Below are positions 21,417 through 59,769 of a DNA stretch of 64,000 bases, one piece after another (position 1 is the stretch's first letter; each line of letters opens with the position of its first letter). The notes beneath the pieces are model-generated. The model ran no database searches, was not told the DNA's origin, and was given only the letters and a program-made list of their open reading frames with translations. Origin of the DNA: Octopus sinensis (lineage: Eukaryota); NCBI RefSeq assembly GCF_006345805.1, contig NC_043018.1, positions 19,158,001-19,222,000 of the forward strand. Reading direction: 5' to 3'. The position numbers and the translations under genes were made by a program.

Positions 21417-21562
21417 TTAATCAATTTATGAAATTGTTGAATTTGTTTTAACACTTTTTTTACACCAAAACTGTTGTACTATTTATGCCAGAATTGTTTT
21501 AGTCGTTGCCTTTCCCTTTTCCTTTTTCTCATTCTTTTCTCTTTGTCTTCTCTTTCCGAAAG

Positions 21563-21727
21563 GTACACCGAGTCTACCGTAGCACTGGAGCTAGCTTCCA
21601 GAAGGCCCAAGCGGAATTTGCACAGGGTGTCATGCGCAATGAAACTGTTCAGACTGCTGCTGCTAATGCCGCTGCTGGCGCTGCCCGAGGTGCAGCACAG
21701 CAGTACGGTTCCAATAATCGCTACTAA
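21563..21727 (+). CDS. SCAMP: SCAMP terminal coding exon
   Basis: Pyrimidine tract + aag|GTA. Encodes [54 protein letters not shown], matching the SCAMP1 C-terminus [37 protein letters not shown]. No upstream SCAMP exons found, so they probably lie 5' of the window. Confidence 0.95.
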
Positions 21728-22512: not shown

Positions 22513-22613
22513 TGTGGCATTACACTCTTACATTGCAAGTATGTATCAACATTTTGTTTTGTATAAATAAAAATTGACTTACAACATGTGTTAGTGTGCT
22601 TGCATATATGTGC

Positions 22614-22644
<31 letters not shown>

Positions 22645-22760
22645 GCATTACACTCTTACATTGCAAGTATGTATCAACATTTTGTTTTGTATAAATAAAA
22701 ATTGACTTACAACATGTGTTAGTGTGCTTGCATATATGTGCGTGAGTGTGTGTGTGTGTT
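22513..22760. repeat. ~128-bp tandem duplication bounded by (TG)n
   Basis: tgtggcattacactcttacattgcaag... occurs at ~22513 and ~22641. Confidence 0.9.
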
Positions 22761-22834
22761 TGTCTGAGTGTATGAATGTGTCTACGAATGCGTGTATGTA
22801 TAGGATCATGCATACATGTGTGTGGGTATGTACG

Positions 22835-22866
<32 letters not shown>

Positions 22867-24119
22867 CACGTATACACACACATGCACACACATTTACACA
22901 CACACACACACAGATGCATGTAATATGCTCGGTTACGTATGTTCTGCTTGGAATCTTAGAATCCTTGTATAAGTTTTTAGTCTTGGACACTTGACCAATT
23001 CCTTTCCGTTCCAATAAAGCAAATCATGTGTTCCTTCATCAGCTCTGATTCCAGACCATTCTCTGTCATTGTCAGAATGAATTTCAACACTACTACTACT
23101 AACACCAACACCACCACCACCTAATGACATCATTTTCTCGTTTATTACTGGAAGGGTACCAATTACTTTGGGCCTTTGCATTTGTTTTGTCCCCACCCCC
23201 CATCTACACACCCATCTTTTTTTTTTATTAGCATTTGGTTGATTTCTTCCTTTTACTGCTTCTTTCTTAATATTAACCCTTAAACAGCAGATGTCATCAA
23301 TGAATGTCTCAAAACCTTTACATAGATACGGCCTTCATCCATTATAAAACGGGAGCTGAATATCTATTGGCCCCTTTCCATAATGGAATTCGAAATCTTA
23401 TTGTGTGAGGGACTAATAGTTCTTACGGTTTTTGTCCTTATTCAAAGTGGAGGCGTGTGGCTTAGTGGTTAGGGATGTTGGACTCATGGTCGTAGGATTG
23501 TGGTTTCAATTCCTGGACCGGGCGGCGCGTTGTGTTCTTGAGCAAAACACTTCATTTCACGTTGCTCCAGTCCACTCAGCTTGCAAAAGTGAGTTATCCT
23601 GCGATGGACTTGCATCCTATCCAGGTGGGATATATATACGCCAGGAAAGCAACCCTTAGGAGTTTATCACGACTCGAGAAGGTAACTTTTACCTTTACTT
23701 ATCTAAAGTGAAAATAAGTATAAAATTTACCCTTCAGATAAAAAAAAAGGACCTTTTTTTTTTCTTTTGTCTGTTTGACATCCAACATTCATGCAAGTAT
23801 TTTCCATTGTTTAAGGGCTTAAAAGCGGTGGTGGGGTAGGTGAGAGGGTAGAGTAGCATTCTCTGTCCATTTTTTTGGTATTTAGTTACGTCCCTTCGTA
23901 ATCTCACTCAGTAAACTTTAGGGAGGAATAAGACAAGTACCAATCCCTTCCTGAGAAATTTGTAGACTTGGTGGCAATATCCAAAAGCAACAACAAAAAG
24001 AACAACAAATGAAATCCCTTATTGCAATGGTTTGTCATGTGATTCAGTCAGTTTTTGACTTGATTTCAGGGGTCACTGTTCTCCATATTTTTGCTCTCCG
24101 CCTTCCATCGTCAGAGTAA

Positions 24120-27895: not shown

Positions 27896-29554
27896 ATGTA
27901 TGTATATATATATATATATACACATACCAAGCTAGTATCAAAAAGTTACCGGACTAGTCCTGAAGTGCACCAACAGATGGCAGCACATGACTGCATGCAC
28001 AGTGGGAGCTAGCAGTGACCTTCCTGAGGCAGTGTTCTGAGTGACATCACTGTGGTTACTTTGCAAGTTGTGAGATTTGTGTCTTTGTGATCACGTGTGT
28101 ATGCTGTCGTCTGCAGTTTTTGTCACGAGAAGGATGCAGGAACAAAGAGCCGACATGAAATTTTGTGTTGAACTTGGGAAGTCTGCTACAGGGACATTGA
28201 GCATGCTTTGGCAAGCTTACGGCAATGAAGCAATGAAATTGTATGCAATGTTTCAAGTTGCACGGGCGCTTCTTCAACAGGAGGAGAATGTCCCTGGAAT
28301 AGGGATGAGCGATCTGGAAGATCTGCCACGAATGTCAACCCCAGAAATGGGGAGAAAATTGATCAGGTTGTGCACGAGGGAGTGTTGGAGGACAACCAAT
28401 GATGTTGGTCTGTTGTTGGATTGGAAGCACTCTGTCGGTTCCGACGATGAGGGTTCCGGTTGATCCGAATCAACGGAACAGCCTGCTCGTGAAATTAACG
28501 TGGAAGTGGCTGGGCACTCCACAGACACGTGTGCCCTTAACGTAGTTCTCGGGGATATTCATCGTGACACGGAGAGTGACAAGGCCGGCCCTTTGAAATA
28601 CAGGTACAACAGAAACAGGAAGTAAGAGTGAGAGAAAGTTGGGGTGAAAGAGTACAGCAGGGATCACCACCATCCCCTGCTGGAGCCTCGTGGAGCTTTT
28701 AGGTGCTTTCGCTCAATAAACACTCACAACGCCCGGTCTGGGAATCGAAACCACGAGTCCGCTGCCCTAACCACTGGGCCATTGCGCCTCCACTGGTCCA
28801 TTGTATGGGTCCGTGCAGGCAATCCTAGCATCTGAATGGAACATGTGGTGTGTCTCTACCAAATTTGTTCCCCAACTGCTGACCACTGAGCGGAAAGAAT
28901 ATCGTGTTGAAGTCTGTCAAGCCCTCTGTTGACGACCCGGCCTTCATGTCGAGGATCATCACCAGTGACAAGAGTTGGGTCTATGGGTGCGACCCCTAAG
29001 ACAAAAGCAGCAGTCATCACAATGGAAGACGGACATCATCTCCATGAATCGAAGAAGGCACGGCAGAGCTGCAGCTCAACCAAGAGCATGCCCATCGTTT
29101 TTTTTTTGACATTGTGCATTGAGAATTCATCCCCTCCAGGGCTAGACTGTCAATCGAGAGTCCTACTGTGATATTTTGAAGCATTTGAAGGCGGATTTTC
29201 AGTGAAAGTGACCAGATCTGTGGAACATGAAGAATCGGATTCTTCTCGACGAAGCACCATCACTCAGCTCTCCTCACTCCTGGGTTTCTTATGGTACCAC
29301 TTCTCCACCTGTCCTATTCACTACATTTAGCACCTGCAGACTTCCATCTCTTCCCCAAGAGGAAAATCCAGCTCAAAGGTTGCCATTTTAATGCCATTGT
29401 AAGGATCCAGAGAAAATCGCAAAAGGTCCTGGAGTCGCTTACGAAAAACAGCTTCCAGGCTGGATATCAAAAGTGGCAGGAATGCCAGCACTGGTGTATT
29501 GCTGTGCAAGGGGACTATTTCGAAGGAGATGATGTTATTTTTTTTTTATTAAAC

Positions 29555-29955
29555 ATATTTACATTATTTGTATTTGATGGATATTTGTCCTCATCTTGTT
29601 TGTTATTAACACAACGTTTCGGCTGATATACCCTCCAGCCTTCATCAGGTGTCTTTTGGAATTTCGAACCTGGGTTCTCATTCCTAAGGTATTTTTCGAT
29701 ATTATTATTATTATTATTATTATTGTTATTATTCAGGTCACAGGCATATAGTGTAGTGGTTAAGAGTGCAGGCTACTTACTAACCCCAAGATTCCGAGTT
29801 TGATTCCAGGCAGTGACCCGCATCGTAAAATACCTTAGGAATGAGAACCCAGGTTTGAAATTTCCCCAAGACACCTGATGAAGGCTGGAAGCTATATCAA
29901 CCGAAATGTGTTAACAACAAAGATGAGGACAAATATCCGTCAAATGTAAATAATT
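29555..29955. mobile_element. Inverted-arm element (~140-bp arms) nested in a mariner
   Basis: 29555-29705 is the reverse complement of 29825-29955; the spacer holds an (ATT)n run and a tRNA-like head fragment. Confidence 0.65.
29608..29653 (-). ncRNA. Minimal hammerhead-like motif (family D); degenerate inverted copy at ~29871-29915 (+)
   Basis: Reverse complement GACAC-CUGAUGA-A-GGCUG...CAGCC-GAAA-CG-UU-GUGUU. Stem III reduced to the palindrome ACGU; one extra A after the core. Confidence 0.5.
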
Positions 29956-34135: not shown

Positions 34136-37100
34136 AAAATGCTAATTTTTTAAAACAAAAACTAACAATATATTAGGTTGTCCCAAAAGTTCGTAAACAC
34201 TTGCGAAAATTGAATTTTTACTAACAAAAACAACAAAAATTATTCCTCAAAATAAAGACCATTATTTTCCAAGACTTTCTACGAACTTTTGGGACAACCT
34301 TATATTATCAAAATAGGTTGCAGCAAGGGACTAAGAAAAAACAAAGAGAGAGAGGAAGTAAAGAAGATTCATATGAATGGAATTTCTATTCTTAGAAAAT
34401 CCTGGCTCATTTGAACAGAGCAACAGATTTTCATTGAACAAGTGTTTTCACTAAGATAATAGAGTTGCTTTTGTTTTTCAATAGAATTAAATTTACTTTT
34501 GAGAACCTTTAGTTGGCAACTCTTTCCAGATTACTCATTTTTTGAACTGGGAAGTGGGTGGAGGGAGTCACCTTGGTTAATACAATAAACAAATATTGAA
34601 TTTACTAAGATTCCCAACCATGTGGTTTTGAGTTCAGTCCCACTGCATGGCACTTTGGGCAAAGTGTCTTCTACTATAGCCTAGGGCCAACCAAAGCCTC
34701 GTGAGTGGATTTGGTAGACAAGCTAAAAAGTGTGCCATACATACACACACACACACACATTATCATCATCATCGTTGACATAATGAAATAGGAACAGCTA
34801 TGCCATAGGGGTCGCGGGAAGGAAGTTTTTTGGGTGGTACAGGTGACAGGATCAACAAAACACCCGTTTGAAAGCAGAATTGAAGAAGCAGACGTGTTCA
34901 AGACGGAGAAAAAAAGCCAGTCTGAGGGAAGCGAACTTCCGGGTCAAGGTTCTCATCGTTAAAGTTGAAGCTGGAGGTTTTGTGGGCAAATCTGCTTACG
35001 AGTGAATGTAACAACTCTAGAGGAGAAAAAAAAGGGACCAAAACCCCAAAGGCAATATCAGAGAAGTGGAAAAATGTTCTAACAGAACACTTCCATGCTT
35101 CCTGAGATTCGCCAATACTACACTTGATTTTCTCCCCTCCATACACACACAAGCATGTATCTGACTCATACATTGTTCGCTTTCCAGACATTTCTACATT
35201 GCTGCATGTACTTTATATGCACTTTCTGACAAGTTGTGGTGCACCTGAGCACTGTATACAAAAATCTCATTTTTATTATTATAGAAGTGATCTGGTCGAA
35301 GAAGAACAAGAACGACCTCCAAACGGGTTGGAAGGAAATATTTTTATTTCTAAGGGAAGTAACTCTGAGTGATATTTCATTGCTACCATGACAACGTGCG
35401 TTATTTCCACTCAGCTGTTTTTGTCAATTTGACTGAAATCATTTTCTCTTCCTCCAGCCACAGAATGGAGCAATAGTTTAGCTGAACTTCAAGAATGCAT
35501 TCTGTTAGCAGAGTGTCTTCTACTACAAAGTGTCTTCATATTGTGTTTCTACTAAGGATAGATTTGAAATTTGTAGTTATATATAGAGAGAGTACGTGAT
35601 GAAAAATTTCAGTAACAGATCGACATAAGATTCCTAAATCTATTTGTTCTGGTATCCTAATTAATTAATAATGGCTGAAAAGGCAGGGATCCAGTTGGAG
35701 AGAGGCAGGAAAGACCCTCAATCGTCCAATTTAACTGAAATAAATAGTTAATTCTGGGACAGCCTGTACACTGGGGCCATTGTCGACCATTCCGTCGAGG
35801 TCGACTTTGCCTTTCATCCTTTCGGGGTTCGATAAATAAAGTACCAGTTTCCAACCGGGGGTCGATGTAATCGACTTAATCCCTTTGTCTGTCCTTGTTT
35901 GTCCCCTTTATGTTTAGCCCCTTGTGGGTAGTAAAGAAATAGGTATTTCGTCTGCTGCTACGTTCTGAGTTCAAATCCCGCCGAGGTCGACTTTGCCTTT
36001 CATCCTTTCGGGGTCGATTAAATAAGTACCAGTTGTTTGTCCCCTCTATGTTTAGCCCCTTGTGGGTAGTAAAGAAATAGGTATTTCGTCTGCCGCTACG
36101 TTCTGAGTTCAAATCCCGCCGAGGTCGACTTTGCCTTTCATCCTTTCGGGGTCGATTAAATAAGTACCAGTTACGCACTGGGGTCGATATAATCGACTTA
36201 ATCCGTTTTTCTGTTCTTGTTTGTCCCCTCTATGTTTAGCCCCTTGTGGGTAGTAAAGAAATACATTTTCACAAGTGATGGGATGCAGGAGGTTGAATGA
36301 GATGCTAAAATTTGCAGGGAATTGGCACAATAATATATCAGCTCCTACATTTGACTCTCAGAAGATGAGGGTCTTTTATGCTTCCCTCCGGCTGGATCCC
36401 TGCTTTTCAGCCAACTTTTTTTTTTTTTTAATTTGCCCAATGCAATGAAATAGGAAGTTAATTTTGGGAGAGTATGATTTACCACAGATATCACAGTGAT
36501 ATGGTTTCTCACCTGTGCAGGTGTGCTTGTGAGTATATCTTTAGCATTCAGATTATTGTGTCGAATGTAAAGCTTATGTATTTACACCATGTAAAATTAA
36601 TCTTGCATCATTTCATGGCTTTGAGATTTCAATGATGTGATTGTTTATTTTCAAAAATGACACAATGAGGTAGCTATGAATGACCATATCTGACTAGTTT
36701 GAACATAAAACAGGTAGAATATTTTGGCTGGATATGGCTGGTTTAAACATTATAAAGGATTAAACTTCTCAGCTTACCACATTGATGTTACATTTTCAAG
36801 TACAGCAGCAACTACAACCATTTTTCAGTAAATAAAAATTTATTAACAAACAAGATTTAAATACAAGATACAAGTTGATATAAAATATTTTTTTACACCG
36901 TATAAGATTTTGTTCACTGAATCAGAAAATTTCAAAATTTGTTGATTCATTATCAAATTCATAATACGAAAAATATTATATATAAATGTGCAATTTTTTT
37001 TACATTCGTATGAATATATATATAGCTATATTTGGGGAGAGTCATCAGCATTAGACATATTAAAACATTCACCGGCTATTGTTTGTCTATATTTCACACT

Positions 37101-37681
37101 ATTTTGTACATGTGATGTAGAAAACTTTTGTCATTGTAAAGCAAATGAAATAGCAATCTCTATAAAGGGCCGTTTTCAGTAAATCCAGAAAAAACACCCC
37201 AAAAAAAACACAGCAACAGCTTGTGGCTGAACTACCAATCCTGGAATAAGTGAGGTGTCAGCTTCATGATAGGGTATAAAGAGTTAAAGTATGAGAAGAA
37301 GGGTGATCAAAGCAGTTTCTTGTAGAGGACCCAAGCAAAGAGCAATTTTTAAAAAAGCAAAATTCGAATTTTTGCAAAAAGTTTCTGAAAATTCACCAAA
37401 ATAAAAACAATTTCTTTATTCACCATATAAGGTTAAGAAAAAGAGGGGACGATATAGGGACAGACAAAACAAACATTGGGGTCAGGGGATCGAATGGAAC
37501 GGTCGAGGGGTTTTATAGAATGCTTAATTCAGAAATCCACCCAGGCAGTTTGCATCATAAAACCAAAAGCAGATTTGGTGGCGAGAACGAAATTTACTTC
37601 CGGGTTGCAAACTCATGTCCCAAGTACAATTTCTTTTTTTACAAACAAGTTCGATTTTCTCAATCTTACAAAAAAATAAAT

Positions 37682-38067
37682 GGCGATCTTTCGTCTCTAG
37701 TAGACCTTTCCGTCGATTTCCGTAAAAATTTTTTTTTTTTTTACATATGGGCTTGCGGGAACTTTTGAAGTAATATACACATACACCGAGTAAAAAATTT
37801 CAGTTATCTCTGTCTCTTCACACACACTAACAGAAGCACTTCACTTACACAACATACTGTCTGTCTCCCACACCCCATCAAACACACACATGTGCATCAA
37901 TGCTTCCCATGCACGGTAACTTCAAAAGAACTTCCCTCGTCATACAATCGCTTTCTCTTAGTCTCTTTCGCTCTCATTACTTCAAAAGTTCCCGCAAGCC
38001 CATATGTAAAAAAAAAATTTTTTTTACGGAAATCGACGGAAAGGTCTACTAGAGACGAAAGATTGCC
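37682..38067. mobile_element. MITE with ~90-bp TIRs and 8-bp TSD (Merlin- or Mutator-like)
   Basis: GGCGATCTTTCGTCTCTAGTAGACC... / ...GGTCTACTAGAGACGAAAGATTGCC; TSD aaataaat on both sides. Confidence 0.85.
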
Positions 38068-38604
38068 AAATAAATATATAATTATATAATAAACATATAA
38101 TTCGCTAGTAGTACCTATAATTGATATATAAATATATTAAGGTATAATTGTAGTAACACTTTACACGTCGTCACCTTTTTGTTTTATTTTTTTTGGGGGT
38201 ATTTTCAAACAGAGCTCAACCAAGTTCATTGCCTCCAGTCACGATATACCTTTAAATTAACATTTTCTACAAGACAAACTTACTTGGCAAATTAAATGTA
38301 CAAAGTAAAATTATAGTTACGACGAATTAAATAGGAGGGGTTCAATTTCTGATTTAAGACAAAAGTTGATTTAGGGATGGATTTTCCATTACAAGGAAAA
38401 GAAATGATACAGAAAAATTATACATCTTATTCTTTCCATACTATGATAAAAAAAAAAAATCATTTAATAGCACTGGCAATCCATCACTCTGGATTGAATC
38501 TGTTTTTATCGGTTAAATACTACAATTATACCTTTTTGTTTTTATGACCTGGTCAAAGGGTTTAGTTTGACCGCGAGATATCCTCTCCAATCGTTTAAAC
38601 ATTT

Positions 38605-39600
38605 CTAACGCTCATAAAAAATTAAATGTTTTTTTGGTATCCAACAAGCAGAAACCATTCCTTGATTTAAGTTGCGATTAATATCACACAACATATGTTC
38701 AAAACGGTAGAATTGTTTGTTTTCTTCGTTTTTTGCGTAGTTTTGGAAAACTTGAACCAGAAACTTAACGAAACTCTGGCTATTATCTTCGTAAAAAATG
38801 CGAACCACAAAAAGATCATCTTTCTCACAACATTCTGTTTCTCCACTATTTTTTCCCGAATTCTCCTTCTTGGTGCTACCATCCGTGTTATCAGTTTGTT
38901 CTCCACTACGGGTAGAACAAGACTTGCCTGTCTGCGAAGTATTCCCTGGATTATTATTAGCATCGTCGTTGTTCGAGGAATTATTTTTCTTAGATTCAGA
39001 AGTAACCCTTTCGCTATTAATAAGAAATAATTTCGGTGTGTTTTTAAGACAGAAATGTTCAATTATTTTGCCAACGGACAATTCGGTTTCTTTTCGGTCA
39101 ATCTGAAACAAAATGAATAGCAAAAAGATACCATCTGTGTCGATACCACATTTATTTTTGATATCGTTTTCCAATTCATTTACTGTTTTAACAACAACAG
39201 TAAATTTCATAGACTCAAAAAGTTTACTTAACTCATCAACTTCCTTCTTGTCCTGTTTTTCGTCGATGATTAACAAAAGGAAATGAGGTTCGAATACAGG
39301 ATACGACTTGAGGAGACAAGCCAAGTCAGAATAGCCGGTTTCCTTTAGAATTGAAATCAGATTTTCGGCTTTGTCTTTGTCATTGGAAACGGAACGATAC
39401 ATAGTCTTAAAAATCTCGTCGTGAACATCGTAATTAGAGGAAAATGTTTCCGAGGATATATTAAGTTTTTCCTTTGCTTTAGGTATAAATTCCCCTTCTA
39501 TATCGAAACGTTTACCAAATGTCCTTCTAATGTTTTTAAACATCTCCAGAATCTCCATGGAAAATTCTTTTTCTAGTGAATCAGTTCTGTTTTGTGACAT
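38605..39600 (-). CDS. Intronless 331-aa death-fold + catalytically dead caspase-like protein (c-FLIP-like pseudo-caspase)
   Basis: Uninterrupted non-repetitive ORF. N-terminal ~100 aa ends in ENLISILKETGYSDLACLLK, like the last helices of a death fold. Caspase p20 elements in order: HFLLLIIDE, EVDELSKLFESMKFTV, DGIFLLFILFQ (SHG position), LSVGKIIEHF, NTPKLFLINSERV (PKLFFIQACRG position). p10-like DDLFVV...SFVKFLVQVF...FEHMLCDINR...PKKHLIF. Homology judged by eye only. Confidence 0.75.
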   Translation of the reverse strand: MSQNRTDSLEKEFSMEILEMFKNIRRTFGKRFDIEGEFIPKAKEKLNISSETFSSNYDVHDEIFKTMYRSVSNDKDKAENLISILKETGYSDLACLLKSYPVFEPHFLLLIIDEKQDKKEVDELSKLFESMKFTVVVKTVNELENDIKNKCGIDTDGIFLLFILFQIDRKETELSVGKIIEHFCLKNTPKLFLINSERVTSESKKNNSSNNDDANNNPGNTSQTGKSCSTRSGEQTDNTDGSTKKENSGKNSGETECCEKDDLFVVRIFYEDNSQSFVKFLVQVFQNYAKNEENKQFYRFEHMLCDINRNLNQGMVSACWIPKKHLIFYER

Positions 39601-41017
39601 GATGAGAGAATTAATTAAAAAGCCACAACAAGCACCTGCTTCGCCTTCCGACGGAACACTTAATTACTAGTAATGCGGTGTAAATTAAATTTGTCCCTAC
39701 TAAAATAAAGGATTTATTTGTTCCAGCTGATGAAAGATTTTCGGATCTTTTCCCTTTGAACGGCAGATCGAGAAATTAATTTTTTTGTAACTAAACACTT
39801 TCAAACACTCGGACACTGGTAGACTGTGTCATATAAAAAAGCGGCGAACTGGCAGAAACGTTAGCACGCCGGGCGAACTGCGTAGCCGTATTTCGTCTGC
39901 CGTTACGTTCTGAGTTCAAATTCCGCCGAGGTTGACTTTGCCTTTCATCCTTTCGGGATCGATGAATTAAGTACCAGTTACGCACTGGTGTCGATGTAAT
40001 CGACTTAATCCGTTTGTCTGTCCTTGTTTGTCCCCTCGGTGTTTAGCCCCTTGTGGGTAGTAAAGAAATAGGTATTTCGTCTGCCGCTACGTTCTGAGAT
40101 CAAATCCCGCCGAAGTCAACTTTGCCTTTCATCCTTTCGGGGTCGATTAAATAAGTACCTGTTACGCACTGGTGTCGATGTAATCGACTTAATCCGTTTG
40201 TCTGTTCTTGTTTGTCCCCTCTGTGTGCAGCCCCTTGTACGTAGTAAAGAAATAAGAATGTGTCTTATAAAACATCTTTTACTCTTAGTGTTACTCTCTT
40301 TTACTCTTTTACTTGTTTCAGTCATTTGACTGTAGCCATGCTGGAGCACCGCCTTTAGTCGAGCAAATCGACCCCGGGACTTATTCTTTGTAAGCCCAGT
40401 ACTTATTCTATCTGTCTTTTTTGCCGAACCGCTAAGTTACGGGGACGTAAACACACCAGCATCGGTTGTCAAGCAATGCTAGGGGGACAAACACAGATAC
40501 ACAAACATATACACACACACTTATATATATATACATATATACGACAGGCTTTTTTCAGTTTCCGTCTACCAAATCCACTCACAAGGCATTGGTCGGCCCG
40601 GGGCTATAGCAGAAGACACTTGCCCAAGGTGCCACGCAGTGGGAGTGAACCCGGAACCATGTGGCTGGTTAGCAAGCTACTTCCCACACAGCCACTCCTG
40701 CGCCTATGTGTTGTTGATAAAAGTTTATATTTCCAAAGTTATTTCGTGTTAAAGTTGTCTTATTTCGGTAATTTCAACCAATCAATGACGTGTATTCAGC
40801 TGAATAAAATTACTGCTGTTGTTTGTCAACAACAACAACTATCGGCGGTGTATATTTCGTTTTAGTTACAGAAAATTAATTCCTCGATTTGCCGTTCAAA
40901 GGGAAAAGATCCAGATTTTCGACTCTTCTACGTAGTGATATCCTATCATATTTGTATTTAGTAAACGGAAAGACGCCTAAATACCGTGGTATATTTCTCC
41001 GTATTAACCCTTTACAG

Positions 41018-41193: not shown

Positions 41194-42300
41194 CTTTACA
41201 GTCTTATAATGACACCCAAACATAGGATCTTTTCGGTTTGAACGGCAGTTTTTTCTAGCGGTGTCATATGAAATTGTCACCCATAATTAGGACCCTAGTA
41301 TCGATCTATTGCATTTCAATCTGTTTTAGGGTAAGGTTAGAGTTAGGGTTGGGGTTAGGGTTAGGGGTGGGAGGAGGAGTATCAATTTTTCTTCAGAAAT
41401 GTAAATAAACCCAATCTGTTTCTTAAACATGTTCATACGACACGGAATGTTTTCACCTCAATAGACGTCATTGATTGGTTGAAATTTCAGAAATTGAAGA
41501 AAAAAACAACAACAAATATCTTACAAACTGTAGAATTTTCTCAATAAAGCCAAGAGAAAAAGATGTTTTATAAACACATTCTACCAGTATACGAAGTTTA
41601 AAAGTGTTTCATTACGTGGAAATTATTTAAAAAAACTGCCCCCCCCCCCCACGTAACCCTCAATACCTCTACCAACGGGTATTCTATTTCATCAGTCGCT
41701 AAACACAAACGGTAAAACTGACGGCAAGCCTTCGGTATTGGTATACAACGCCATTCCTGCTAATTGACAGATGCAGAGGCTGGGCTGAAGAAAACGGTTA
41801 AATGATGTCGTCTCCCCACACCAACGCTCTGTAGACCAATACCGAAGGAACACCAAATTGACCCTGGCAAAATTTGAACTCAGAACGTAAGCTTCTGTCT
41901 GTTAGTAAATGCTGGAGATGTTTTGACAGACACTCAACTGATTGTACCAACCCATAGCCTTCTTATTAGATAGAGGTTTTGATGGTGATGGTGGTGGTGA
42001 AAGTTGTATTGTTTTTAGTAGTGGTGGTGGTGGTGGTGGGGTAGCCGCAGTAGTAGTTGTACTGGTAGTTGTAGTAGTAGTAGCAGTAATGTTAGTAGTC
42101 GTAGTAATAAGAATGATGGTGGTGGTGGTGGTGGTGGTTGAGGTGGTGATGAGAACAGGGTTGTTGTTTGCGCTCTCGTCGGATGTTAGTAGTAGTAGTA
42201 GTAGTAGTAACAGCAGCAGCAGCAGCAGTAGTATTAGTTGTAGTAGTAGTAGAGTAGTAGTAGTAGTAGTAGCAGCAGCAGTAGTAGTAGTAGTAGTAGT

Positions 42301-42332
<32 letters not shown>

Positions 42333-42418
42333 TAGTGGTAGTAGCAACAGCAGTAGTAGTATTAGTTGTGCAGCAGTTTCACATTTACAAAGTCGATATC
42401 CACCCCCCACCCAGACGA

Positions 42419-42481
42419 ACACCCGATTGTATAGTACGTACACCCGATTGTATAGTACGTACACCCGATTGTATAGTACGT
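42419..42481. repeat. 21-bp tandem repeat x3 upstream of FAHD2
   Basis: acacccgattgtatagtacgt repeated exactly three times. Confidence 0.9.
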
Positions 42482-42870
42482 ATACACGCACAAGCCGTAC
42501 ACCTCGCTCCGTATATATATTTCTTTACTACCCACAAGGGGCTAAACACAGAGAGGACAAACAAGGACAGACAAAGGGATTAAGTCGATAACATCGACCC
42601 CAGTGCGCAACTGGTACTTAATTTATCGACCTCGAAAGGATGAAAGGCAAAGTCGACCTCGGCGGAATTTGAACTCAGAACGTAACGGCAGACAAAATAC
42701 GGTTACGCATTTCGCCCGGCGTGCTCGCTCCGTATATAATAAACACACAGACACACAGACACACACTTATTCAATGTGAAACGGTAAAAAAAAACTATTG
42801 TGACCGGTCAATGTGCTTATTGTTGTAAAAACAAGCAGGACTAGGCTGTTATTTCTAGCAATTAAAAGCA

Positions 42871-43517: not shown

Positions 43518-43554
<37 letters not shown>

Positions 43555-43701
43555 GGAGAGAGAGAGAAAAAGATATATATATATGTATATATATAATCTT
43601 TTTACTATATATATAACATATATATATAATCTTTTGTATATGTATAATATATATATATATATGTATATATATATATTATATATATATATGTATATATATA
43701 G

Positions 43702-43744
<43 letters not shown>

Positions 43745-43761
43745 ATATATATATTGTATAT

Positions 43762-43792
<31 letters not shown>

Positions 43793-44005
43793 TTTTTTCT
43801 CTTTTTACTTGTTTCCGTCAGTCATTTTGACTGCGGCCATGCTGGAGCACCGCCTTTAATCGAGCAACTCGACCCCGGGACTTATTCTTTGTAAGCCCAG
43901 TACTTATTCTATCGGTCTTTTTTGCCGAACCGCTGAGTTACGGGGACGTAAACACACCAGCATCGGTTGTCAAGCAATGCTAGGGGGACAAACACCGACA
44001 CACAA

Positions 44006-44049
<44 letters not shown>

Positions 44050-44212
44050 GACGGGCTTCTTTCAGTTTCCGTCGACCAAACCCACTCACAAGGCATTGGT
44101 GGGCCCGAGGCTATAACAGAAGACACTCGCCCAAGGTGCCACGCAGTGGGACTGAACCCGGAACCATGTGGTTTGTAAACAAGCTACTTACCACACAGCC
44201 ACTCCCCGCGCC

Positions 44213-44298
<86 letters not shown>

Positions 44299-44934
44299 AT
44301 ATATATATTACTTGTTTCACTCATTAGACTACGGTCATGCTGGGGCACCGCCTAGAAGAATTTTAGTCGAACGAATCGATTTCCCCACTGTCAGCCTCCA
44401 CTTATTCTATCGCCTTCTTTTGCCGGAACACTAAGTTACTTTCCTTTACTGCCCACAAGGGGTTAAACATAGAAGGGACAAACAAGGACAGACAAACGGA
44501 TTAAGTCGATTACATCGACCCAGTTTGTAACTGGTACTTTAATTTATCGACCCCGAAAGGATGAAGGCAAAGTCGACCTCGGCGGAATTGGAACTCAAAC
44601 GTAACAGCAGACGAAATACGGCTGCGCATTTCGCCCGGCGTGCTAACGTTTCAGCCAACTCGGACGCCTTTTTTTAACATATCAATACCGGTTATCAAGC
44701 GGTGGTGGAATACACATATACACACGGGTTTCTTTCAGTTTCCGTCCACCAAATCCCTTTTGCTTGACCGAGGGGCAACACAGTGACGCCTGCGTCTATA
44801 CATCCATCAACACACCACACACACACACACCTTGTCTTCTATTTTTGGTTTCAGTCATTGGGACACTCTCATGCTGGGGCACTGTGGTGAAGGGCTTAAT
44901 TTAACAATGCCTGGTACTTATTCTATCGATCTCT

Positions 44935-45271
44935 TTTGCCGAACAGCTTATTTACAGGGACTTAGGGATTTAAACAAAACAACACCAGTTATCAAGCAGG
45001 GACAAACACACACACACACACACACGTAAACATAGATTGTATGTATGTGTGTATGTATGTATGTATGTATGTATGTATGTACATACGATGGGCTTCTTCC
45101 AGTTTCCATCTACCAGATCCACTCACAAGGCTTTGGTCGGCACGAGGCTATAGAAGAAGACACTTGCCCATGGTTCCACGTCATGGGATCGAACCCGGAA
45201 CCATGTGGTTGGGAAGCAAACTTCTTACCACACAGCCAATCCTGCGCCCACACAGCCAAATATGCAAGCAG

Positions 45272-45307
<36 letters not shown>

Positions 45308-46135
45308 ACGCACACACACACACACACGCACGCACGCACGCACATACACGCAGGCACAAGCCACTTTACGCTGCGTGCTGGGTGCTTTTAACCTAACACT
45401 GTCACGAGCGCATTTTATGGGACACTGGCTCTGTGCGTGTGCGTGCGTGTGTGTGCGTGTGTGTGTGTGTGTGTCTGCTTGCATATTTGGCTGTGTGGGC
45501 GCAGGATTGGCTGTGCGGTAAGAAGTTTGCTTCCCAACCACATGGTTCCGGGTTCGGTCCCATGACGTGGAACCATGGGCAAGTGTCTTCTTCAATAGCC
45601 TCATGCCGACCAAAGCCTTGTGAGTGGATCTGGTAGATGGAAACTGGAAGAAGCCCATCGTATGTACATACATACACACATACATACATACATACATACA
45701 TACATACACACATACATACATACATACATTCATACATACATACATACATACATACACACATACATACATACATACATACATACAAGTATACATGCATACA
45801 TACATACATACACACATACATACATACACACATAAATACATACATACACACATACATACATACACCATACATACATGCATACATACATAATACATACACA
45901 ACATACATACAATACATACATACATACATACATACTACATACTACATACATACATACATACATACATACATACATACATACATACATACATACATACATT
46001 CATACATACATGCATACATACACACATACATACAATCTATGTTTACGTGTGTGTGTGTGTGTGTGTGTGAGTCCCTGCTTGATAACCGGTGTTGTTTTGT
46101 TTAAATCCCTAAGTCCTTGTAAATAAGCTATTCGG
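44935..46135. repeat. Inverted duplication (SINE + unique flank + microsatellites) with ~70-bp spacer
   Basis: 45060-45360 is the reverse complement of 45430-45670, and 44935-45045 of 46020-46135. Confidence 0.85.
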
Positions 46136-46874: not shown

Positions 46875-47770
46875 TGCTGGTGTGTTTATATAAAGAGGAA
46901 TGATGACACCTTGTCCTCTGGACCGGAAGGTTCTTAGGATCCAGAAACTCATCTTACGAGCTATATCGACCTTATTGTTGATGTGGGCATTCCAGCTGAG
47001 ATTGTTGTCAAAAATTACTCTTATGTCTCTGATATTATTTGATGCTGTGAGTGATTCCCCTGAAAGAAGGGAATATGGATTGTTTTAGCATAGTCTTTTT
47101 CCCAAAATGCATCAGCTCAAATTTTCTCTCATTTAGTCGTATTTTGTTTTTGTCTGTCCATTGACTTACAGCAGATAGATCAGACTGGAGTCCAGTTTGG
47201 TCTTCTCCGATAATAATTTTCTGGAAAATTTTCGCCGAATATTTTCACTTTGCGTTGTTTGATGATTCTTGAAATATCGTTTATACAGACTGTAAAGAGA
47301 AGCGGACCCAAGACAGTCCCCAGAGAGACACCACTGGTGACTTTTGCTGGGCTTGAGTGGATTCAACCGATCAAAACATGATGTGTTCTGTTCTCCAGGA
47401 AATACTCAATCCAGTGCAGTAGTTTTTCCACGGATTCCAACATTTGACAACTTTGACAGTTGGATATTATGGTCGACTCTGTCGAACGCTTTAATGAAGT
47501 CAAGATATATGATATATATGAGTTCGAACCTGACCCCAAGGCTTTAAGGATATCATCGATATGGTGTAAGAGCTGTGTTAGACAGTCCCTGCAGCAGCGA
47601 AAGCCATGATGGTTTGAATTTAGGAGATTGTGGCTCTCCGGGATCCTTGATCTCACCATCCTTTCAAACATTTTAATGATATGGGGAGGGTTGAGATTGG
47701 GCGATAGTTGACTGTGAGGGATCTGTTTCCCTGTTTGAAGACTAGAATGACAGACTGGGGTAAGAGGTGT
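46875..47770 (-). mobile_element. CR1-clade LINE reverse transcriptase fragment
   Basis: NYRPIS, HHGFR..CLTQLL, YLDFIKAFDRVDH, SGVPLGTVLGPLLF, FDNNLSWNAHI; frameshifted. Confidence 0.88.
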
Positions 47771-47774
47771 TTCG

Positions 47775-48170
47775 GTATGTATGTATGTATGTATGCATGT
47801 ATGTATGTATGTATGTATGCATGCATGCATGCATGTATGTATGTATGTATATGTATGTATGTATGTATGTATGTATGCATGTATGTACGTATGTATGTAT
47901 ACATGAATGTATGTATGTATGTATGTATGTATGTATGTATGCATGTATGTATGTATGTATGTATGCATGCATGTACGTATGTATGCATGTATGTATGTAT
48001 GTATGTATGCATACATGTACGTATGTATGTATGTATGTATGTATGTATGTATGTATGTATGTATGTATGCATGCATGTACGTATGTATGCATGTATGTAT
48101 GCATGTATGTATGTATGTATGTATGCATGTATGTATGTATGTATGTATGTATGCATGTACGTACGTACGT
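47775..48170. repeat. Long microsatellite (TATG)n; others include (CTAT)n 4600-4750, (GTA/GCA/GGT)n 41985-42365, (TA)n 43480-43790, (CATA)n 45660-46030
   Basis: Direct inspection. Confidence 0.95.
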
Positions 48171-48269
48171 ACACGCACATTTTTGTATGTATATTATATG
48201 TACCCGTGACTCGCTGGGTCACAACAAGTCAACTCCAAGTTGAAAATGTCAAAGCAAAGGAAAAAAAAA

Positions 48270-49065
48270 TACTATTTCGTATTTGATGGAATAAAATTCT
48301 TAAATAATACAGTTCTACCTTTGGTTTGACAACATAAACATGACCGAATGTTTCTTCTTTGAAAACCGTTCAAATGGCCTTCAACTTTTTCTTCCTCGGT
48401 TGCTTCTTTGCCATTCTTTGTTCCTACCATTCCAAGTGAAAGACATGGGGTACTTCAGCACAAAGTAATGTTTCTGCAAATTCATGTTAGTTAGTTAGTT
48501 AATTTGGCTCAAAAGCAAATAGCAAGGCCATGTAGGGGGACATGGAGTTAAGTACAGGGTGGTGTTCATGTAAAGAGTTCAGGCCACTTGAGGTCAAGGG
48601 AGGCTTTGAACAAAGCGGTCGTCGGCATCTTCACCATCTCCTCTGGCAGCTTGTTCCACGGATCCGCAACCTGGACGGAGAAAGCTCCTCTCCTTCGATT
48701 TAGATGAAATCGTCGCAGGTAAAGCTTTTCGGAATGACCCCGCAGCTGACGCTCTGGAGCAGGAGTGAAGAACAGCTCTTTCGAGAGGTTACACTTACCG
48801 CTTATGATGTTGTGGGCGAGAATGAGATCACCACGGCGGCGGCGTTTTTCATCATTGACACGCAATGAAAAGAATTTCGTCAATTTCGTCTCAGGAGTGA
48901 CTGTGTGGTAAGTAGCTTGCTTGTGAACTACATGGTTCCGGGTTCAGTCCCACTGCGTGGCATCTTGGGCAAGTGTCTTCTACTATAGCCTCGGGCCGAC
49001 CAAAGCCTTGTGAGTGGATTTGGTAGAGAAACTGAAAGAAACCTGTTCGTATGTATGTATGTATG

Positions 49066-49720: not shown

Positions 49721-50447
49721 ATGTATAGAGAAAAAAAGGAGTACAGATTACACCAGTGTGCCATGGAATACCTATTCCTTTACTACCCACAAGGGGCCAA
49801 ACACAGAGGGGACAAACAGAACAGACAAACGGATTAAATCGATTATCGATTATCTCGACCCCAGTGCGTAACTGGTACTTAATTTATCGACCCCGAAAGG
49901 ATGAAAGGCAAAGTCGACCTCGTCGGCGGATTTGAACTCAGAACGTAACGGCAGACGAATTACCGCTAAGCACTTCGCCCAGCGTGCTAACGTTTCTGCC
50001 AGCTCGCCGCCTTGAATCCTATTTCTTTTATTACCCACAAGGGGCTGAACATAGAGGGGGACAAACATGGACAGACATAGGTATTAAGTCGATTATATCG
50101 ACCCCAGTGCTTAACTGGTACTTAATTTATCGACCCCAAAAGGATGAAAGGCAAAGTCGACCTCGGCGGAATTTGAACTCAGAACGTAACGGCAGACGAA
50201 TTACCGGTAAGCACTTCGCCCAGCGTGCTAACGTTTTTGCCAGCTTGCCGCCTTGAATACCAGTTGCGGAGCACTGTTATAAGGTACAATCCAATTGTTG
50301 ATTGTTTTTCCAGCCTTATGAGATTCCACTCCTCCCATTGCAAGGGGTCTTCGTCTATAAGAGACAACCGCTGTCTGCTTTTCTGCTTTTTGGTTAGGGT
50401 TTCTGATAATATTTCCACTTTAAAAATTAGAGTGTTCATTTCTATTT

Positions 50448-50497
<50 letters not shown>

Positions 50498-51859
50498 TAT
50501 ATTATATATGTATATTATATATTATATATATATATATGTATGTGTGTGGTGTTTGTGTGTCTGTGTTTGTCCCCCTAGCATTGCTTGACAACCGATGCTG
50601 GTGTGTTTACGTCCCCGTCACTTAGCGGTTCGGCAAAAAGAGACCGATAGAATAAGTACTGGGCTTACAAAAGAATAAGTCCCGAGGTCGATTTGCTCGA
50701 CTACAGGCGGTGCTCCAGCATGGCCGCAGTCAAATGACTGAAACAAGTAAAAGAGTAAAAAGTAAGTAAAGTATATGTCTTTCACTGACACCCATATTTA
50801 TCCTCATCATTTCTGAGCAATATTCTTCGTTCATCTGGAAGATGAACTTTCTGTTTCATTATTGCAGTTGCTCTTTCAGGAAGTGACAATCCTAAAATAG
50901 CTGTAACTGCTTCGGCTGGTCCAATGTACCAACCGATTAGATATTGACTAATTTCGTAATCATAGTTTATTTAAACAACAGCTTGGTCATTTCTTTTCAG
51001 TGTGTACTTGATGGCATATTTAGCTGACCTCACTAAGGCATCGATTTCAACGTTACAGTGACGGATGTCCTTAAAAGAGTTTCATTATAAGGCAAAATTC
51101 AGCAGTACACCTGAACTAAAGATATAAACTAAATGTATAGAGAAAAAAAGGATGTTCAGATTACACCAGTGTGCCATGGAATACCTATTTCTTTACTACC
51201 CACAAGGGGCCAAACACAGAGGGGACAAACAAGAACAGACAAACGGATTAAATCGATTATCGATTATATCGACCCCAGTGCGTAACTGGTACTTAATTTA
51301 TCGACCCCGAAAGGATGAAAGGCAAAGTCGACCTCGGCGGAATTTGAACTCAGAACGTAACGGCAGACGAATTACCGCTAAGCACTTCGCCCAGCGTGCT
51401 AACGTTTCTGCCAGCTCGCCGCCTTGAATACCTATTTCTTTATTACCCACAAGGGGCTGAACATAGAGGGGGACAAACATGGACAGACATAGGTATTAAG
51501 TCGATTATATCGACCCCAGTGCTTAACTGGTACTTAATTTATCGACCCCAAAAGGATGAAAGGCAAAGTCGACCTCGGCGGAATTTGAACTCAGAACGTA
51601 ACGGCAGACGAATTACCGGTAAGCACTTCGCCCAGCGTGCTAACGTTTTTGCCAGCTTGCCGCCTTGAATACCAGTTGCGGAGCACTGTTATAAGGTACA
51701 ATCCAATTGTTGATTGTTTTTCCAGCCTTATGAGATTCCACTCCTCCCATTGCAAGGGGTCTTCGTCTATAAAGAGACAACCGATGTCTGCTTTTCTGCT
51801 TTTTGGTTAGGGTTTCTGATAATATTTCCACTTTAAAAATTAGATGTTCATTTCTATTT

Positions 51860-56602: not shown

Positions 56603-56835
56603 GGCGGTGAGCTGGCAGAATCGTTAGCACGCCGGGCGAAATGCTTTGCAGTATTTCGTCCGCCGCTGCGTTCTAAGTTCAAATTCCGCCGAGGTCGACT
56701 TTGCCTTTCATCCTTTCGGGGTCGATAAATTAAGTACCAGTTACGCACTGGTGTCGATGTAATCGACTTAATACCTATGCCTGTCCTTGTTTGTCCCCTC
56801 TGTGTTTAGCCCCTTTGTGGGCAATAAAGAAATAG
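56603..56835 (+). mobile_element. tRNA-derived SINE family 2; other copies ~11995-12610, 25410-25820, 35780-36262, 39840-40255, 42520-42725(-), 44437-44670(-), 49770-50255(-), 51185-51665(-), 62452-62683(-)
   Basis: ggcggtgagctggcagaatcgttagcacg...gagttcaaattccgccgaggtcgactttgcc...gtgggtagtaaagaaata; often in head-to-tail arrays. Confidence 0.9.
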
Positions 56836-59430: not shown

Positions 59431-59616
59431 AAATAAGCAAGAAGGATATCCAGAGGTAATGCAGTACGACCGTTTCATGCAACTCCATTTAATTGAACGA
59501 TACAATCATTACATCAATTTAAAATGTAGAGCAATGATTGTATTGCTCAATTAAATGGAGTTGCATGAAACGATCGATCGTACTGCATTACTTCTGGATA
59601 TCCTTGTTGGCTTATT
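59431..59616. repeat. Palindrome whose arms carry only the 3' half of a hammerhead
   Basis: Arms aaggatatccagaggtaatgcagtacgaccgtttcatgcaac / gttgcatgaaacgatcgatcgtactgcattacttctggatatcc; GAAA-C(GGUC)G-UA present, CUGANGA absent. Confidence 0.7.
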
Positions 59617-59689
59617 TCGATACACACACACAAACACACATACATATACGTATATATATATTATATATATATATATATTATATATATAT

Positions 59690-59769
<80 letters not shown>

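What the first reader, a model, noticed from the sequence alone, without database searches (positions are those of the whole stretch)
38605..39600. Intronless death-fold pseudo-caspase lacking both catalytic residues
Seen: an intact 996-bp single-exon CDS in a region where neighbouring genes have 12-19-kb introns. By-eye alignment places LFQ at the catalytic SHG and NSERV at QACRG, so His and Cys are both lost. Established: c-FLIP is a catalytically dead caspase-8 paralogue that regulates death signalling. Inference: a lineage-specific, possibly retroposed decoy caspase with a single CARD/DD-like prodomain rather than tandem DEDs.
Basis: partly seen in the sequence, partly recalled or inferred. 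Interest (0 to 1): 0.75.

Follow-up and report, generated by a model that had tools for sequence, protein, structure and literature searches.

The report
Octopod catalytically dead caspase homologue gene
The ORF is a real, selectively maintained gene of octopus-like cephalopods that encodes a caspase-shaped protein with no catalytic machinery, probably a non-enzymatic regulator of cell-death proteases, and it is an unannotated example of an already known kind of protein.

Summary
The 996-bp ORF (38605-39600, minus strand, 331 aa) is real. On its own it matches nothing in Pfam or the PDB. It has four relatives: two alleles from one project, one more distant Logan contig, and a syntenic Argonauta hians "hypothetical protein". 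A profile of the family hits caspase-3/7 (E 1.8e-7). One relative passes Pfam Peptidase_C14. The AlphaFold model's best PDB matches are procaspase-8, caspase-6 and procaspase-3.

Every member lacks the catalytic His (window F165-Q166-I167) and Cys (window N195-S196-E197-R198-V199), and the loop carrying the S1 arginine is deleted. All members have a single coding exon.

Selection keeps the frame open. dN/dS against the 50%-identical orthologue is 0.61 (CI 0.43-0.86), and 0 of 20,000 neutral simulations stay stop-free. The protein still evolves fast: 29% identity to Argonauta, next to a SCAMP exon that is 100% identical.

The roughly 98-residue N-terminal helical domain is probably CARD-like. 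A local profile match to CARD helix 6 gives E 1e-3, and 0 of 220 shuffles reach its score. The top fold hits are death-fold domains but are not significant.

The decoy or regulator function, transcription and a retroposed origin remain untested.

Verdict: a new member of the pseudo-caspase kind, of moderate interest.

The parts
38605..39600 (-). Complete single-exon CDS, 331 aa plus TAG stop (38605-38607): pseudo-caspase
   Evidence: orthologue P0001 aligns end to end; dN/dS 0.61, CI 0.43-0.86
39307..39600 (-). Residues 1-98: N-terminal five-helix domain, CARD-like (moderate support); family-invariant MFKN, HDEIF and SY motifs
   Evidence: helices 4-31, 38-46, 56-69, 75-87, 91-98; top fold hits are death-fold, E >= 0.28; local hhalign match to CARD helix 6
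39013..39306 (-). Residues 99-196: p20-like half of the caspase fold (beta1-alpha1-beta2-alpha2-beta3-alpha3-beta4)
39100..39108 (-). F165-Q166-I167, the position of the catalytic S-H-G: His lost
   Evidence: HMMER alignment to caspase-3; family alignment; codons TTT CAG ATT read
39004..39018 (-). N195-S196-E197-R198-V199, the position of Q-A-C-R-G: Cys replaced by Glu
   Evidence: codons AAT AGC GAA AGG GTT read
38812..39012 (-). Residues 197-263: long, disordered, N/S/T/G-rich inter-subunit linker containing D237-N-T-D240|G (DSSD in the orthologue)
   Evidence: pLDDT below 50 over 197-263; indel-rich; absent from P0002 and P0003; motif positions
38608..38811 (-). Residues 264-331: p10-like half (beta5, two helices, beta6), with the strongly conserved C-terminal strand ACWIPKKHLIF
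39601..39722 (-). Conserved 5' flank (about 70% identical to the orthologous contig); it contains a polypyrimidine-AG at 39700-39701 that could be a 5'UTR splice acceptor (untested)
38570..38604 (-). Conserved start of the 3' flank or UTR (93% over 29 nt in the orthologous contig)
21560..21724 (+). Synteny anchor, not part of the gene: last coding exon of a SCAMP gene, convergent with the pseudo-caspase as in Argonauta hians
   Evidence: 100% aa identity over 55 residues to L004 19850-20014, inside a gene called with PF04144 SCAMP

Best explanation
38605-39600 (-) is a functional, single-coding-exon gene of an octopod cephalopod. It encodes a pseudo-caspase: a probably CARD-like N-terminal helical domain of about 98 residues, then a complete caspase fold (p20-like half, long disordered linker, p10-like half). 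The catalytic His and Cys are replaced, and the beta1-alpha1 loop that carries the S1-pocket arginine in caspase-3 is deleted, so it cannot be an Asp-specific cysteine protease (shown). It belongs to a small, fast-evolving, unannotated family that is syntenic between this genome and Argonauta hians. The loss of catalysis and the single coding exon are therefore ancestral to the sampled family (shown). The mechanism is inferred. By analogy with FLIP(L)/caspase-8 and the dipteran caspase-like decoy molecules, the protein would act without catalysis on the activation of a CARD-type initiator caspase. In molluscs these are caspase-2 or caspase-Y, with CRADD as the only CARD adaptor and no Apaf-1. 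Its prodomain would take it to the same platform, and its conserved beta6 edge (ACWIPKKHLIF) would pair with a caspase protomer in place of a second active subunit, either damping or priming activation. My confidence is about 0.9 in 'catalytically dead caspase homologue under selection' and about 0.4 in the specific regulatory mechanism.
For: Caspase homology: the four-sequence profile hits caspase-3/7/6 and CED-3 chains in the PDB, best E 1.8e-7, in register through PKLF. Relative P0002 scores 39.7 bits on Pfam Peptidase_C14, cut-off 21.4. hhalign against human caspase-9 gives probability 91%, E 9e-7. The AF2 model has the caspase order of strands and helices, and its top Foldseek PDB hits are procaspase-8, caspase-6, procaspase-3 and drICE (probability 1.0, TM-target 0.5-0.64). 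Dead active site. Real gene: intact ORFs in four loci. dN/dS is 0.61, 95% CI 0.43-0.86, with 0.18% of bootstraps at or above 1. Neutral simulation at the observed divergence gives about 10.8 stops, and 0 of 20,000 runs stay open. Synteny with Argonauta next to SCAMP. CARD-like prodomain. Pathway context (CARD caspases, CRADD, no Apaf-1 in molluscs): PMC11463336. Pseudo-caspase precedents: PMC7586951 and PMC3141678, which cites Bryant et al. 2010.
Against: There is no expression evidence. The Logan contigs with the orthologue branch into different repeats at their 5' ends and look genomic. The window protein itself is not in the gene-call collection. dN/dS of 0.61 is high and roughly uniform across domains (0.55-0.72), so constraint is weak. 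The model is only moderately confident (pLDDT 58.9). The CARD assignment rests on about 23 aligned columns at hhalign probability 21%, and the fold hits are not significant. No partner caspase or adaptor from this species was examined, so heterodimerisation is pure analogy. The long linker is specific to the window/P0001 lineage and absent from P0002 and P0003.
Confidence: 0.55

Rival explanations
1. It is a maintained non-catalytic caspase-fold protein, but it has been neofunctionalised as a scaffold or adaptor in a process unrelated to caspase activation, such as immune signalling or a cephalopod-specific pathway. The caspase fold would serve only as a dimerisation module.
For: The substrate groove is dismantled: the L1 loop is deleted and the beta5-alpha4 (L3) loop appears shortened. 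Divergence is very fast (29% identity to the syntenic Argonauta orthologue, next to a 100% conserved SCAMP exon). The invariant motifs MFKN and HDEIF in the prodomain have no counterpart in known CARDs.
Against: The closest precedents for dead caspase paralogues all act on caspases (PMC7586951). The C-terminal strand that forms the caspase dimer interface is the best conserved segment. The prodomain's only detectable similarity is to CARDs of caspase-9, CED-3 and Apaf-1.
Confidence: 0.27
2. It is a non-functional relic: an old retrocopy or decaying paralogue whose ORF happens still to be open.
For: High dN/dS (0.61). No annotation or expression record. TE-rich surroundings, with a TIR-bounded element starting 143 nt upstream of the ATG. 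Catalytic residues lost.
Against: dN/dS is significantly below 1. At the observed divergence about 11 stops are expected under neutrality, and 0 of 20,000 simulations stay open. ORFs of similar length are intact in four independent loci, including a syntenic one in Argonauta. All indels between the orthologues keep the frame. Hydrophobic core strands are conserved while the linker varies.
Confidence: 0.06
3. It is a gene captured from a virus or carried by a transposable element, not a host caspase paralogue.
For: The CDS is intronless and AT-rich and is embedded among SINEs and a TIR element.
Against: No terminal repeats bracket the ORF. It is single-copy in the window and in the 20.9-kb Argonauta locus. 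The chromosomal position next to SCAMP is conserved. No viral structure match reaches E <= 0.001 in BFVD.
Confidence: 0.03
4. It is still a protease that uses non-canonical catalytic residues.
For: Cysteines C258, C305 and C319 and His182 are conserved between the window protein and P0001.
Against: None of them is conserved in all four members or lies at the active-site columns. The S1 Arg loop is deleted.
Confidence: 0.02

Closest known systems
FLIP(L) / CFLAR, the vertebrate pseudo-caspase (PMC7586951)
   Same: It combines a death-fold-type prodomain with a full caspase-like domain that lacks the catalytic cysteine. It is a paralogue-derived regulator. It has a large/small pseudo-subunit linker that is cleavable in FLIP(L); here there is a candidate DNTD|G site.
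   Different: FLIP has tandem DEDs and is a clear caspase-8/10 paralogue. This protein has one domain of about 98 aa whose only detectable similarity is to CARDs. A DED control scored at background. Its sequence is too divergent to assign to any caspase clade. Its origin is independent (cephalopod lineage). Here the S1 Arg loop is also deleted. Its function is untested.
Dipteran caspase-like decoy molecules (Aedes aegypti CASPS18; Bryant et al. 2010, cited in PMC3141678)
   Same: They are lineage-specific, enzymatically inactive caspase homologues that arose by gene duplication and modulate a paralogous caspase.
   Different: The mosquito decoys sit beside a recognisably similar active paralogue and have short prodomains (my own knowledge). 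Here no close active paralogue was found, identity to solved caspases is 9-16% in the Foldseek alignments, and there is a long helical prodomain.
C. elegans CSP-3 and vertebrate CARD-only proteins such as ICEBERG and COP (my own knowledge, not checked here)
   Same: They are non-catalytic caspase-derived proteins that interfere with activation of a CARD-caspase by occupying a dimerisation or CARD interface.
   Different: Each of those keeps only one module: the small subunit only, or the CARD only. This protein keeps both the prodomain and a complete pseudo-protease domain.
Lophotrochozoan CARD-caspases caspase-2 and caspase-Y, with CRADD as adaptor (PMC11463336)
   Same: The likely ancestral architecture is a CARD plus a caspase domain. 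These are the plausible partners or targets.
   Different: Those caspases are active and detectable by standard domain searches. This family fails Pfam for 3 of 4 members and lacks the catalytic dyad.
[quoted passage not shown]
   Same: It is a molluscan caspase-fold protein with an unusually long, regulatory inter-subunit linker.
   Different: Those are active executioners. Here the long linker is present only in the window/P0001 lineage, and the protein is catalytically dead.

Membership tests
Caspase family (MEROPS C14A / Pfam PF00656 Peptidase_C14) | Caspase alpha/beta fold with p20-like and p10-like halves | tested here: met
   Profile against the PDB, E 1.8e-7; hhalign against caspase-9, probability 91%; secondary-structure order; Foldseek top hits are all caspases, probability 1.0
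Caspase family (MEROPS C14A / Pfam PF00656 Peptidase_C14) | Scores above the Pfam gathering threshold | tested here: not met
   The window protein has no Peptidase_C14 hit even at E <= 10. Only relative P0002 passes, with 39.7 bits against a cut-off of 21.4
Caspase family (MEROPS C14A / Pfam PF00656 Peptidase_C14) | Catalytic His in the SHG motif after beta3 | tested here: not met
   F165-Q166-I167 in the window protein. No member has His at or near this column
Caspase family (MEROPS C14A / Pfam PF00656 Peptidase_C14) | Catalytic Cys in the QACxG motif after beta4 | tested here: not met
   N-S-E197-R-V in the window protein. K in P0001 and P0002, I in P0003
Caspase family (MEROPS C14A / Pfam PF00656 Peptidase_C14) | S1 pocket Arg/Gln/Arg (caspase-3 R64, Q161, R207) | tested here: not met
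   The R64 loop falls in a gap of about 13 residues. Q161 aligns with N195. The R207 region is shortened and its alignment is ambiguous
Caspase family (MEROPS C14A / Pfam PF00656 Peptidase_C14) | Asp-specific proteolytic activity | not testable with these tools
   Needs recombinant protein and peptide substrates
Pseudo-caspase of the cFLIP type | Caspase-like domain without the catalytic cysteine | tested here: met
Pseudo-caspase of the cFLIP type | Tandem death effector domains | tested here: not met
   There is only one helical domain of about 98 aa before the caspase fold. FADD DED scores at background in hhalign: 9.3 against a shuffle mean of 9.6-9.8
Pseudo-caspase of the cFLIP type | Heterodimerises with and regulates an initiator caspase | not testable with these tools
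   No multimer prediction, partner sequences or assays were available
CARD (death-fold) prodomain | Sequence or profile similarity to CARD | tested here: inconclusive
   Pfam gives nothing. The HMM against the PDB gives nothing significant. No column shuffle out of 220 reaches that score. DED, DD and PYD controls score at background
CARD (death-fold) prodomain | Six-helix death-fold bundle of about 90 residues | tested here: inconclusive
   Five helices are predicted, the first very long, at pLDDT about 62. Many of the top 20 Foldseek PDB hits are CARD, DD or DED domains (ranks 1-4, 6, 7 among them), but the best has E 0.28 and TM 0.41-0.51
CARD (death-fold) prodomain | Homotypic CARD-CARD binding | not testable with these tools
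   Requires binding assays
Processed retrogene | Coding sequence without introns | tested here: met
   One uninterrupted ORF in the window and in L001, L003 and L004
Processed retrogene | Poly(A) remnant and flanking target-site duplications | tested here: not met
   There is no A-run on the gene strand downstream of the stop; the A-run at about 38449-38459 is on the opposite strand. No direct repeats bracket the gene. These marks are expected to have decayed if the event predates the Argonauta split
Processed retrogene | Identifiable intron-containing parent gene | not tested
   No cephalopod genome collection was available. The protein searches found no close active paralogue

The most novel reading that the evidence does not exclude
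The family is an independently evolved, octopod-restricted 'FLIP for CARD-caspases'. It would be a CARD-bearing pseudo-caspase that tunes the Apaf-1-less CRADD/caspase-2 (or caspase-Y) pathway of molluscs. Its unusually fast evolution would reflect conflict with pathogens or lineage-specific control of programmed death, for example post-reproductive senescence.
Probability: 0.25. Interest if true: 0.65.

Novelty: new member of a known kind. Interest (0 to 1): 0.45.

Why it matters
Pseudo-caspases are rare and informative regulators. FLIP(L) is described as the only human one (PMC7586951). Apoptotic signalling in molluscs is poorly understood, and according to PMC11463336 it lacks Apaf-1. A dedicated dead-caspase gene with a CARD-like prodomain would give a concrete, testable handle on how CARD-caspase activation is controlled in cephalopods. 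The case also shows that a real caspase-superfamily gene can escape both genome annotation and Pfam. Three of the four members score nothing, and the one deposited copy is named "hypothetical protein". Caspase inventories of cephalopods are therefore probably incomplete.

Tried and rejected
- Pfam on the window protein alone gave only noise (RPAP3_C, Neur_chan_memb).
- phmmer of the single protein against the PDB found nothing.
- The exact look-up of the window protein in the assembly collection found no record.
- The word-indexed homologue searches with the protein, the family profile and P0002 added only P0001 and P0003. The exhaustive HMMER search added P0002.
- A literature search for the SRA run id found no paper. 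Literature searches on cephalopod and mollusc caspases and on pseudo-caspases found no description of this family.
- I tried to decide from contig ends whether the Logan contigs are transcripts. They diverge into different repeat sequences at the 5' end and all end at the same 3' base, so they look genomic. This gives no expression evidence.
Concatenating ORFs exceeded the size limit, so I dropped it. A regex search for SCAMP motifs upstream of 21560 found nothing, so the neighbour's intron sizes remain unverified.
- The viral structure library gave no significant match.
- The bacterial promoter/terminator scan and the tRNA scan were uninformative.
- L003 (P0002) shares no DNA similarity with the window or the Argonauta locus, so its taxon and its orthology or paralogy are unknown.

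Full report
**Observation.**
- The ORF listing finds an ATG-to-TAG ORF of 331 codons at exactly 38605-39600, on the minus strand (sequence).
- It is the only long ORF in the window that is not microsatellite or repeat read-through.
- The window has 38% G+C. The chance of 331 stop-free codons is about 2e-10, so about 2e-6 such ORFs are expected in 64 kb. The ORF is therefore real and non-random.

**First searches.**
- Taken alone, the protein matches nothing. There is no Peptidase_C14, CARD, Death or DED hit in Pfam even at E <= 10, and no PDB chain by phmmer.
- Its exact sequence is not among the gene calls of the public assemblies.
- The word-indexed search of 5.8 billion proteins found one relative, P0001 (341 aa, 50% identity, full length).
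- The exhaustive HMMER search of 1.84 billion cluster representatives found three: P0001, P0002 (305 aa) and P0003 (290 aa).
- P0003 is GAB1607690.1, "hypothetical protein Ahia01_001052900 [Argonauta hians]".
- P0001 and an allele, P0004 (N128D), come from four sequencing runs of one project. P0002 comes from one Logan contig of unknown taxon.
- In every locus the CDS is one uninterrupted exon.

**Caspase fold.** Four independent lines agree.
- A profile of the four-sequence alignment (A2) hits caspase-3, -7 and -6 (including reconstructed ancestral effector caspases) and CED-3 in the PDB, with best E 1.8e-7. Dozens of caspase-3 entries score between 2e-5 and 1e-4. The alignment runs in register from the start of the p20 subunit to the C-terminus.
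- P0002 on its own passes Pfam Peptidase_C14 (39.7 bits, cut-off 21.4).
- The AlphaFold2 model (pLDDT 58.9, pTM 0.52) has the caspase order of elements. After five N-terminal helices it runs beta1(106-112)-alpha-beta2-alpha-beta3(158-164)-alpha-beta4(191-196), then a disordered 197-263, then beta5(264-269)-alpha-alpha-beta6.
- Foldseek against the PDB returns procaspase-8, caspase-6, procaspase-3 and drICE as the top hits (probability 1.0, TM on target 0.5-0.64). Unrelated Rossmann-like folds appear only lower down.
- The model's confidence is moderate. The structural evidence is therefore corroborative rather than sufficient on its own.

**Dead active site.**
- HMMER aligns PKLFLINSERV with PKLF(F/I)IQACRG, so QACRG corresponds to N195-S196-E197-R198-V199 and the nucleophile Cys is Glu.
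- S-H-G corresponds to F165-Q166-I167. hhalign instead places a 3-residue gap there.
- No family member has His or Cys in or next to these columns. P0001 has CQI and NSKRV, P0002 has CCG and NVKIK, and P0003 has a gap and YKISR.
- The beta1-alpha1 loop that carries the S1 arginine of caspase-3 aligns to a gap of about 13 residues. Q161 aligns with N195. The loop after beta5 is shorter.
- Loss of catalysis is therefore ancestral to the sampled family. It is not a recent lesion.

**Is it a functional gene?**
- Against P0001, Nei-Gojobori gives dS 0.51 and dN 0.31, so dN/dS is 0.61. The bootstrap 95% CI is 0.43-0.86, and 0.18% of replicates reach 1. The ratio is similar in all four segments (0.55-0.72).
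- Random substitution of the CDS to the observed 27.6% nucleotide difference produces about 10.8 internal stops. None of 20,000 replicates stays open.
- All indels between the orthologues preserve the frame. They are concentrated in the linker, while the core strands and the C-terminal strand ACWIPKKHLIF are conserved.
- Position is conserved. In the 20.9-kb Argonauta locus the gene is convergent with a gene called SCAMP (PF04144).
- The exon at L004 19850-20014 is 100% identical over 55 residues to window 21560-21724 (+). That exon ends in a stop and reads as the SCAMP C-terminal tail. It has the same tail-to-tail orientation relative to the pseudo-caspase.
- The window gene and P0003 are thus positional orthologues, yet they share only about 29% identity. 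The gene is selectively maintained but fast evolving.
- It is single-copy in both loci. No LTRs or TIRs bracket it. It has no significant viral structural relative.

**N-terminal domain.**
- Residues 1-98 are predicted as five helices, the first long. pLDDT is 61-83 in the full model and 62 in isolation.
- The domain has no Pfam or PDB sequence match.
- Foldseek with the isolated-domain model gives no significant hit (best E 0.28). However, the top of the list is dominated by death-fold domains: MAVS CARD, FADD DD, the PIDD/RAIDD DD complex, CARD9 CARD, TNFR1 DD, caspase-8/cFLIP DEDs, vFLIP and PEA-15 DED.
The scores are 17.4 for caspase-9, 17.4 for Apaf-1 and 16.6 for CED-3. FADD DED, FADD DD and ASC PYD score 9-12, which is background.
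- One of 300 shuffles of the caspase-9 CARD reaches the real score.
- Against a seven-CARD profile the score is 23.4 (E 1.1e-3, probability 21%). No column shuffle out of 220 exceeds 15.6.
- I read this as moderate support for a divergent CARD, at about 0.6. It is certainly one domain, not tandem DEDs.

**Origin.**
- A single coding exon in all members is compatible with an ancient retroposition of a CARD-caspase mRNA.
- Nothing else supports that. There is no poly(A) remnant on the gene strand, no target-site duplication and no identified parent.
- A conserved polypyrimidine-AG lies 99 nt upstream of the ATG, in both the window and L001. It could be a 5'UTR acceptor. That would mean "single coding exon" rather than "intronless gene". 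This is untested.

**Mechanism (inferred).**
- The substrate groove is gone, so the protein is unlikely to act as a substrate trap. What is kept is the prodomain and the sheet, including the beta6 edge that forms the caspase dimer interface.
- The best-supported model is the classic pseudoprotease one described for FLIP(L) (PMC7586951) and proposed for the dipteran decoy caspases. The prodomain recruits the protein to an activation platform. The pseudo-protease domain then pairs with an initiator protomer and either blocks or primes activation.
- In molluscs the candidates are caspase-2 and caspase-Y with CRADD, because Apaf-1 is absent (PMC11463336).
- The window/P0001 lineage has a 67-residue disordered linker with a conserved DxxD (DNTD240|G, and DSSD in P0001). 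This could be an executioner-caspase cleavage site. That is speculative.
- The Asp just before beta5 (KDD|LFVV) corresponds to the structural Asp of caspases (PSD|IFVSYS in caspase-9). It is not evidence of cleavage.

**Comparison and novelty.**
- The protein fails the enzymatic membership tests for caspases but is clearly their homologue. It is a pseudo-caspase by definition.
- It is not a cFLIP orthologue: it has no DEDs and arose in a different lineage.
- No paper found in the held library describes it. The only deposited copy is called "hypothetical".
- I rate it a new member of a known kind (lineage-specific dead caspase paralogues), with a possibly new architecture of a CARD-like domain plus a pseudo-caspase domain.
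- Interest is moderate. The existence of such proteins is not surprising. But it gives a handle on cephalopod cell-death control, and it shows that standard domain searches miss part of the caspase repertoire.

**Open points.** Transcription is untested. The source species is unknown; it is an octopod, judged from the Argonauta synteny. The taxon of P0002 is unknown. The neighbours' intron sizes are unverified. The CARD assignment is not settled, and any partner is unknown.

Noticed in passing
window 21560-21724 (+): Terminal coding exon of a SCAMP-family gene (…[23 protein letters not shown]…, followed by a stop). It is 100% identical over 55 aa to the Argonauta hians locus and is convergent with the pseudo-caspase in both genomes. 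The distance from the pseudo-caspase stop is about 16.9 kb here and about 9.0 kb in Argonauta.
   Followed up: partly
window 62184-62400 (+): Isolated exon encoding the start of a fumarylacetoacetate-hydrolase domain (Pfam FAA_hydrolase, E 1.8e-7). It lies head-to-head with the pseudo-caspase, about 22.6 kb away.
   Followed up: partly
window 39743-40912: Element bounded by 41-nt inverted repeats (95% complementary), starting only 143 nt upstream of the pseudo-caspase ATG. A further copy of the terminal sequence lies at 41225-41248. It marks the end of the 5' flank shared with the orthologous contig, so any promoter is either very compact or lies beyond a 5'UTR intron.
   Followed up: partly
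window 39790-40255 and 20 further BLAST segments (e.g. 25413-25820, 35789-36263, 42518-42725, 44441-44676, 49772-50254, 51185-51666, 56604-56835, 62450-62680): A SINE-like repeat of about 230-280 nt, with most segments at 87-96% identity and five weaker ones at 72-77%. It includes a tandem 184-nt duplication (39888-40071 and 40072-40255) next to the gene. blastn does not find it in the Argonauta locus, although tblastx shows that another short repeat is shared. ARAGORN finds no intact tRNA.
   Followed up: partly
window 37681-37774 / 37976-38068: Long inverted repeat (arms of about 90 nt, 93-100% complementary, loop of about 200 nt), MITE- or hairpin-like, about 540 nt downstream of the pseudo-caspase stop codon.
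   Followed up: no
window 28077-28463 and 29291-29626 (+): ORF fragments that look like remains of a mariner/Mos1-type transposase. The only support is a weak Pfam HTH_48 hit (E 0.036); the C-terminal-like piece is unconfirmed.
   Followed up: partly
window 47363-48178 (-): An ORF whose non-repetitive part resembles a fragment of a non-LTR reverse transcriptase by eye, fused to microsatellite read-through. Pfam gave no hit.
   Followed up: partly
window 4344-5656, 22520-23014, 41942-42583, 43553-46104, 47363-48286, 59538-59879: Many of the 'long ORFs' are read-through of microsatellites and low-complexity repeats (for example CATA/TATG-type repeats giving YIHT/CMYV peptides). They are not genes.
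   Followed up: no
L001/L002/L005/L006 (orthologue contigs): Four runs of one project carry the orthologue with three SNPs: one in the 5' flank, one non-synonymous (N128D) and one further coding SNP. The contigs diverge into different repeat sequences at their 5' ends and all stop at the same 3' base, so they look like genomic data rather than transcript data.
   Followed up: yes
L004 10780-10873: The Argonauta protein has a C-terminal extension of about 25 residues beyond the shared …HLIF end. The extension begins at a GTAAGG that resembles a splice donor, so the annotated C-terminus may be read-through into an intron or simply a later stop.
   Followed up: no
L003 1440-2254: Downstream of the P0002 gene, the contig's reverse strand reads by eye like a fragment of a non-LTR retrotransposon reverse transcriptase. 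This was not tested. The contig shares no DNA similarity with the window or with the Argonauta locus.
   Followed up: no
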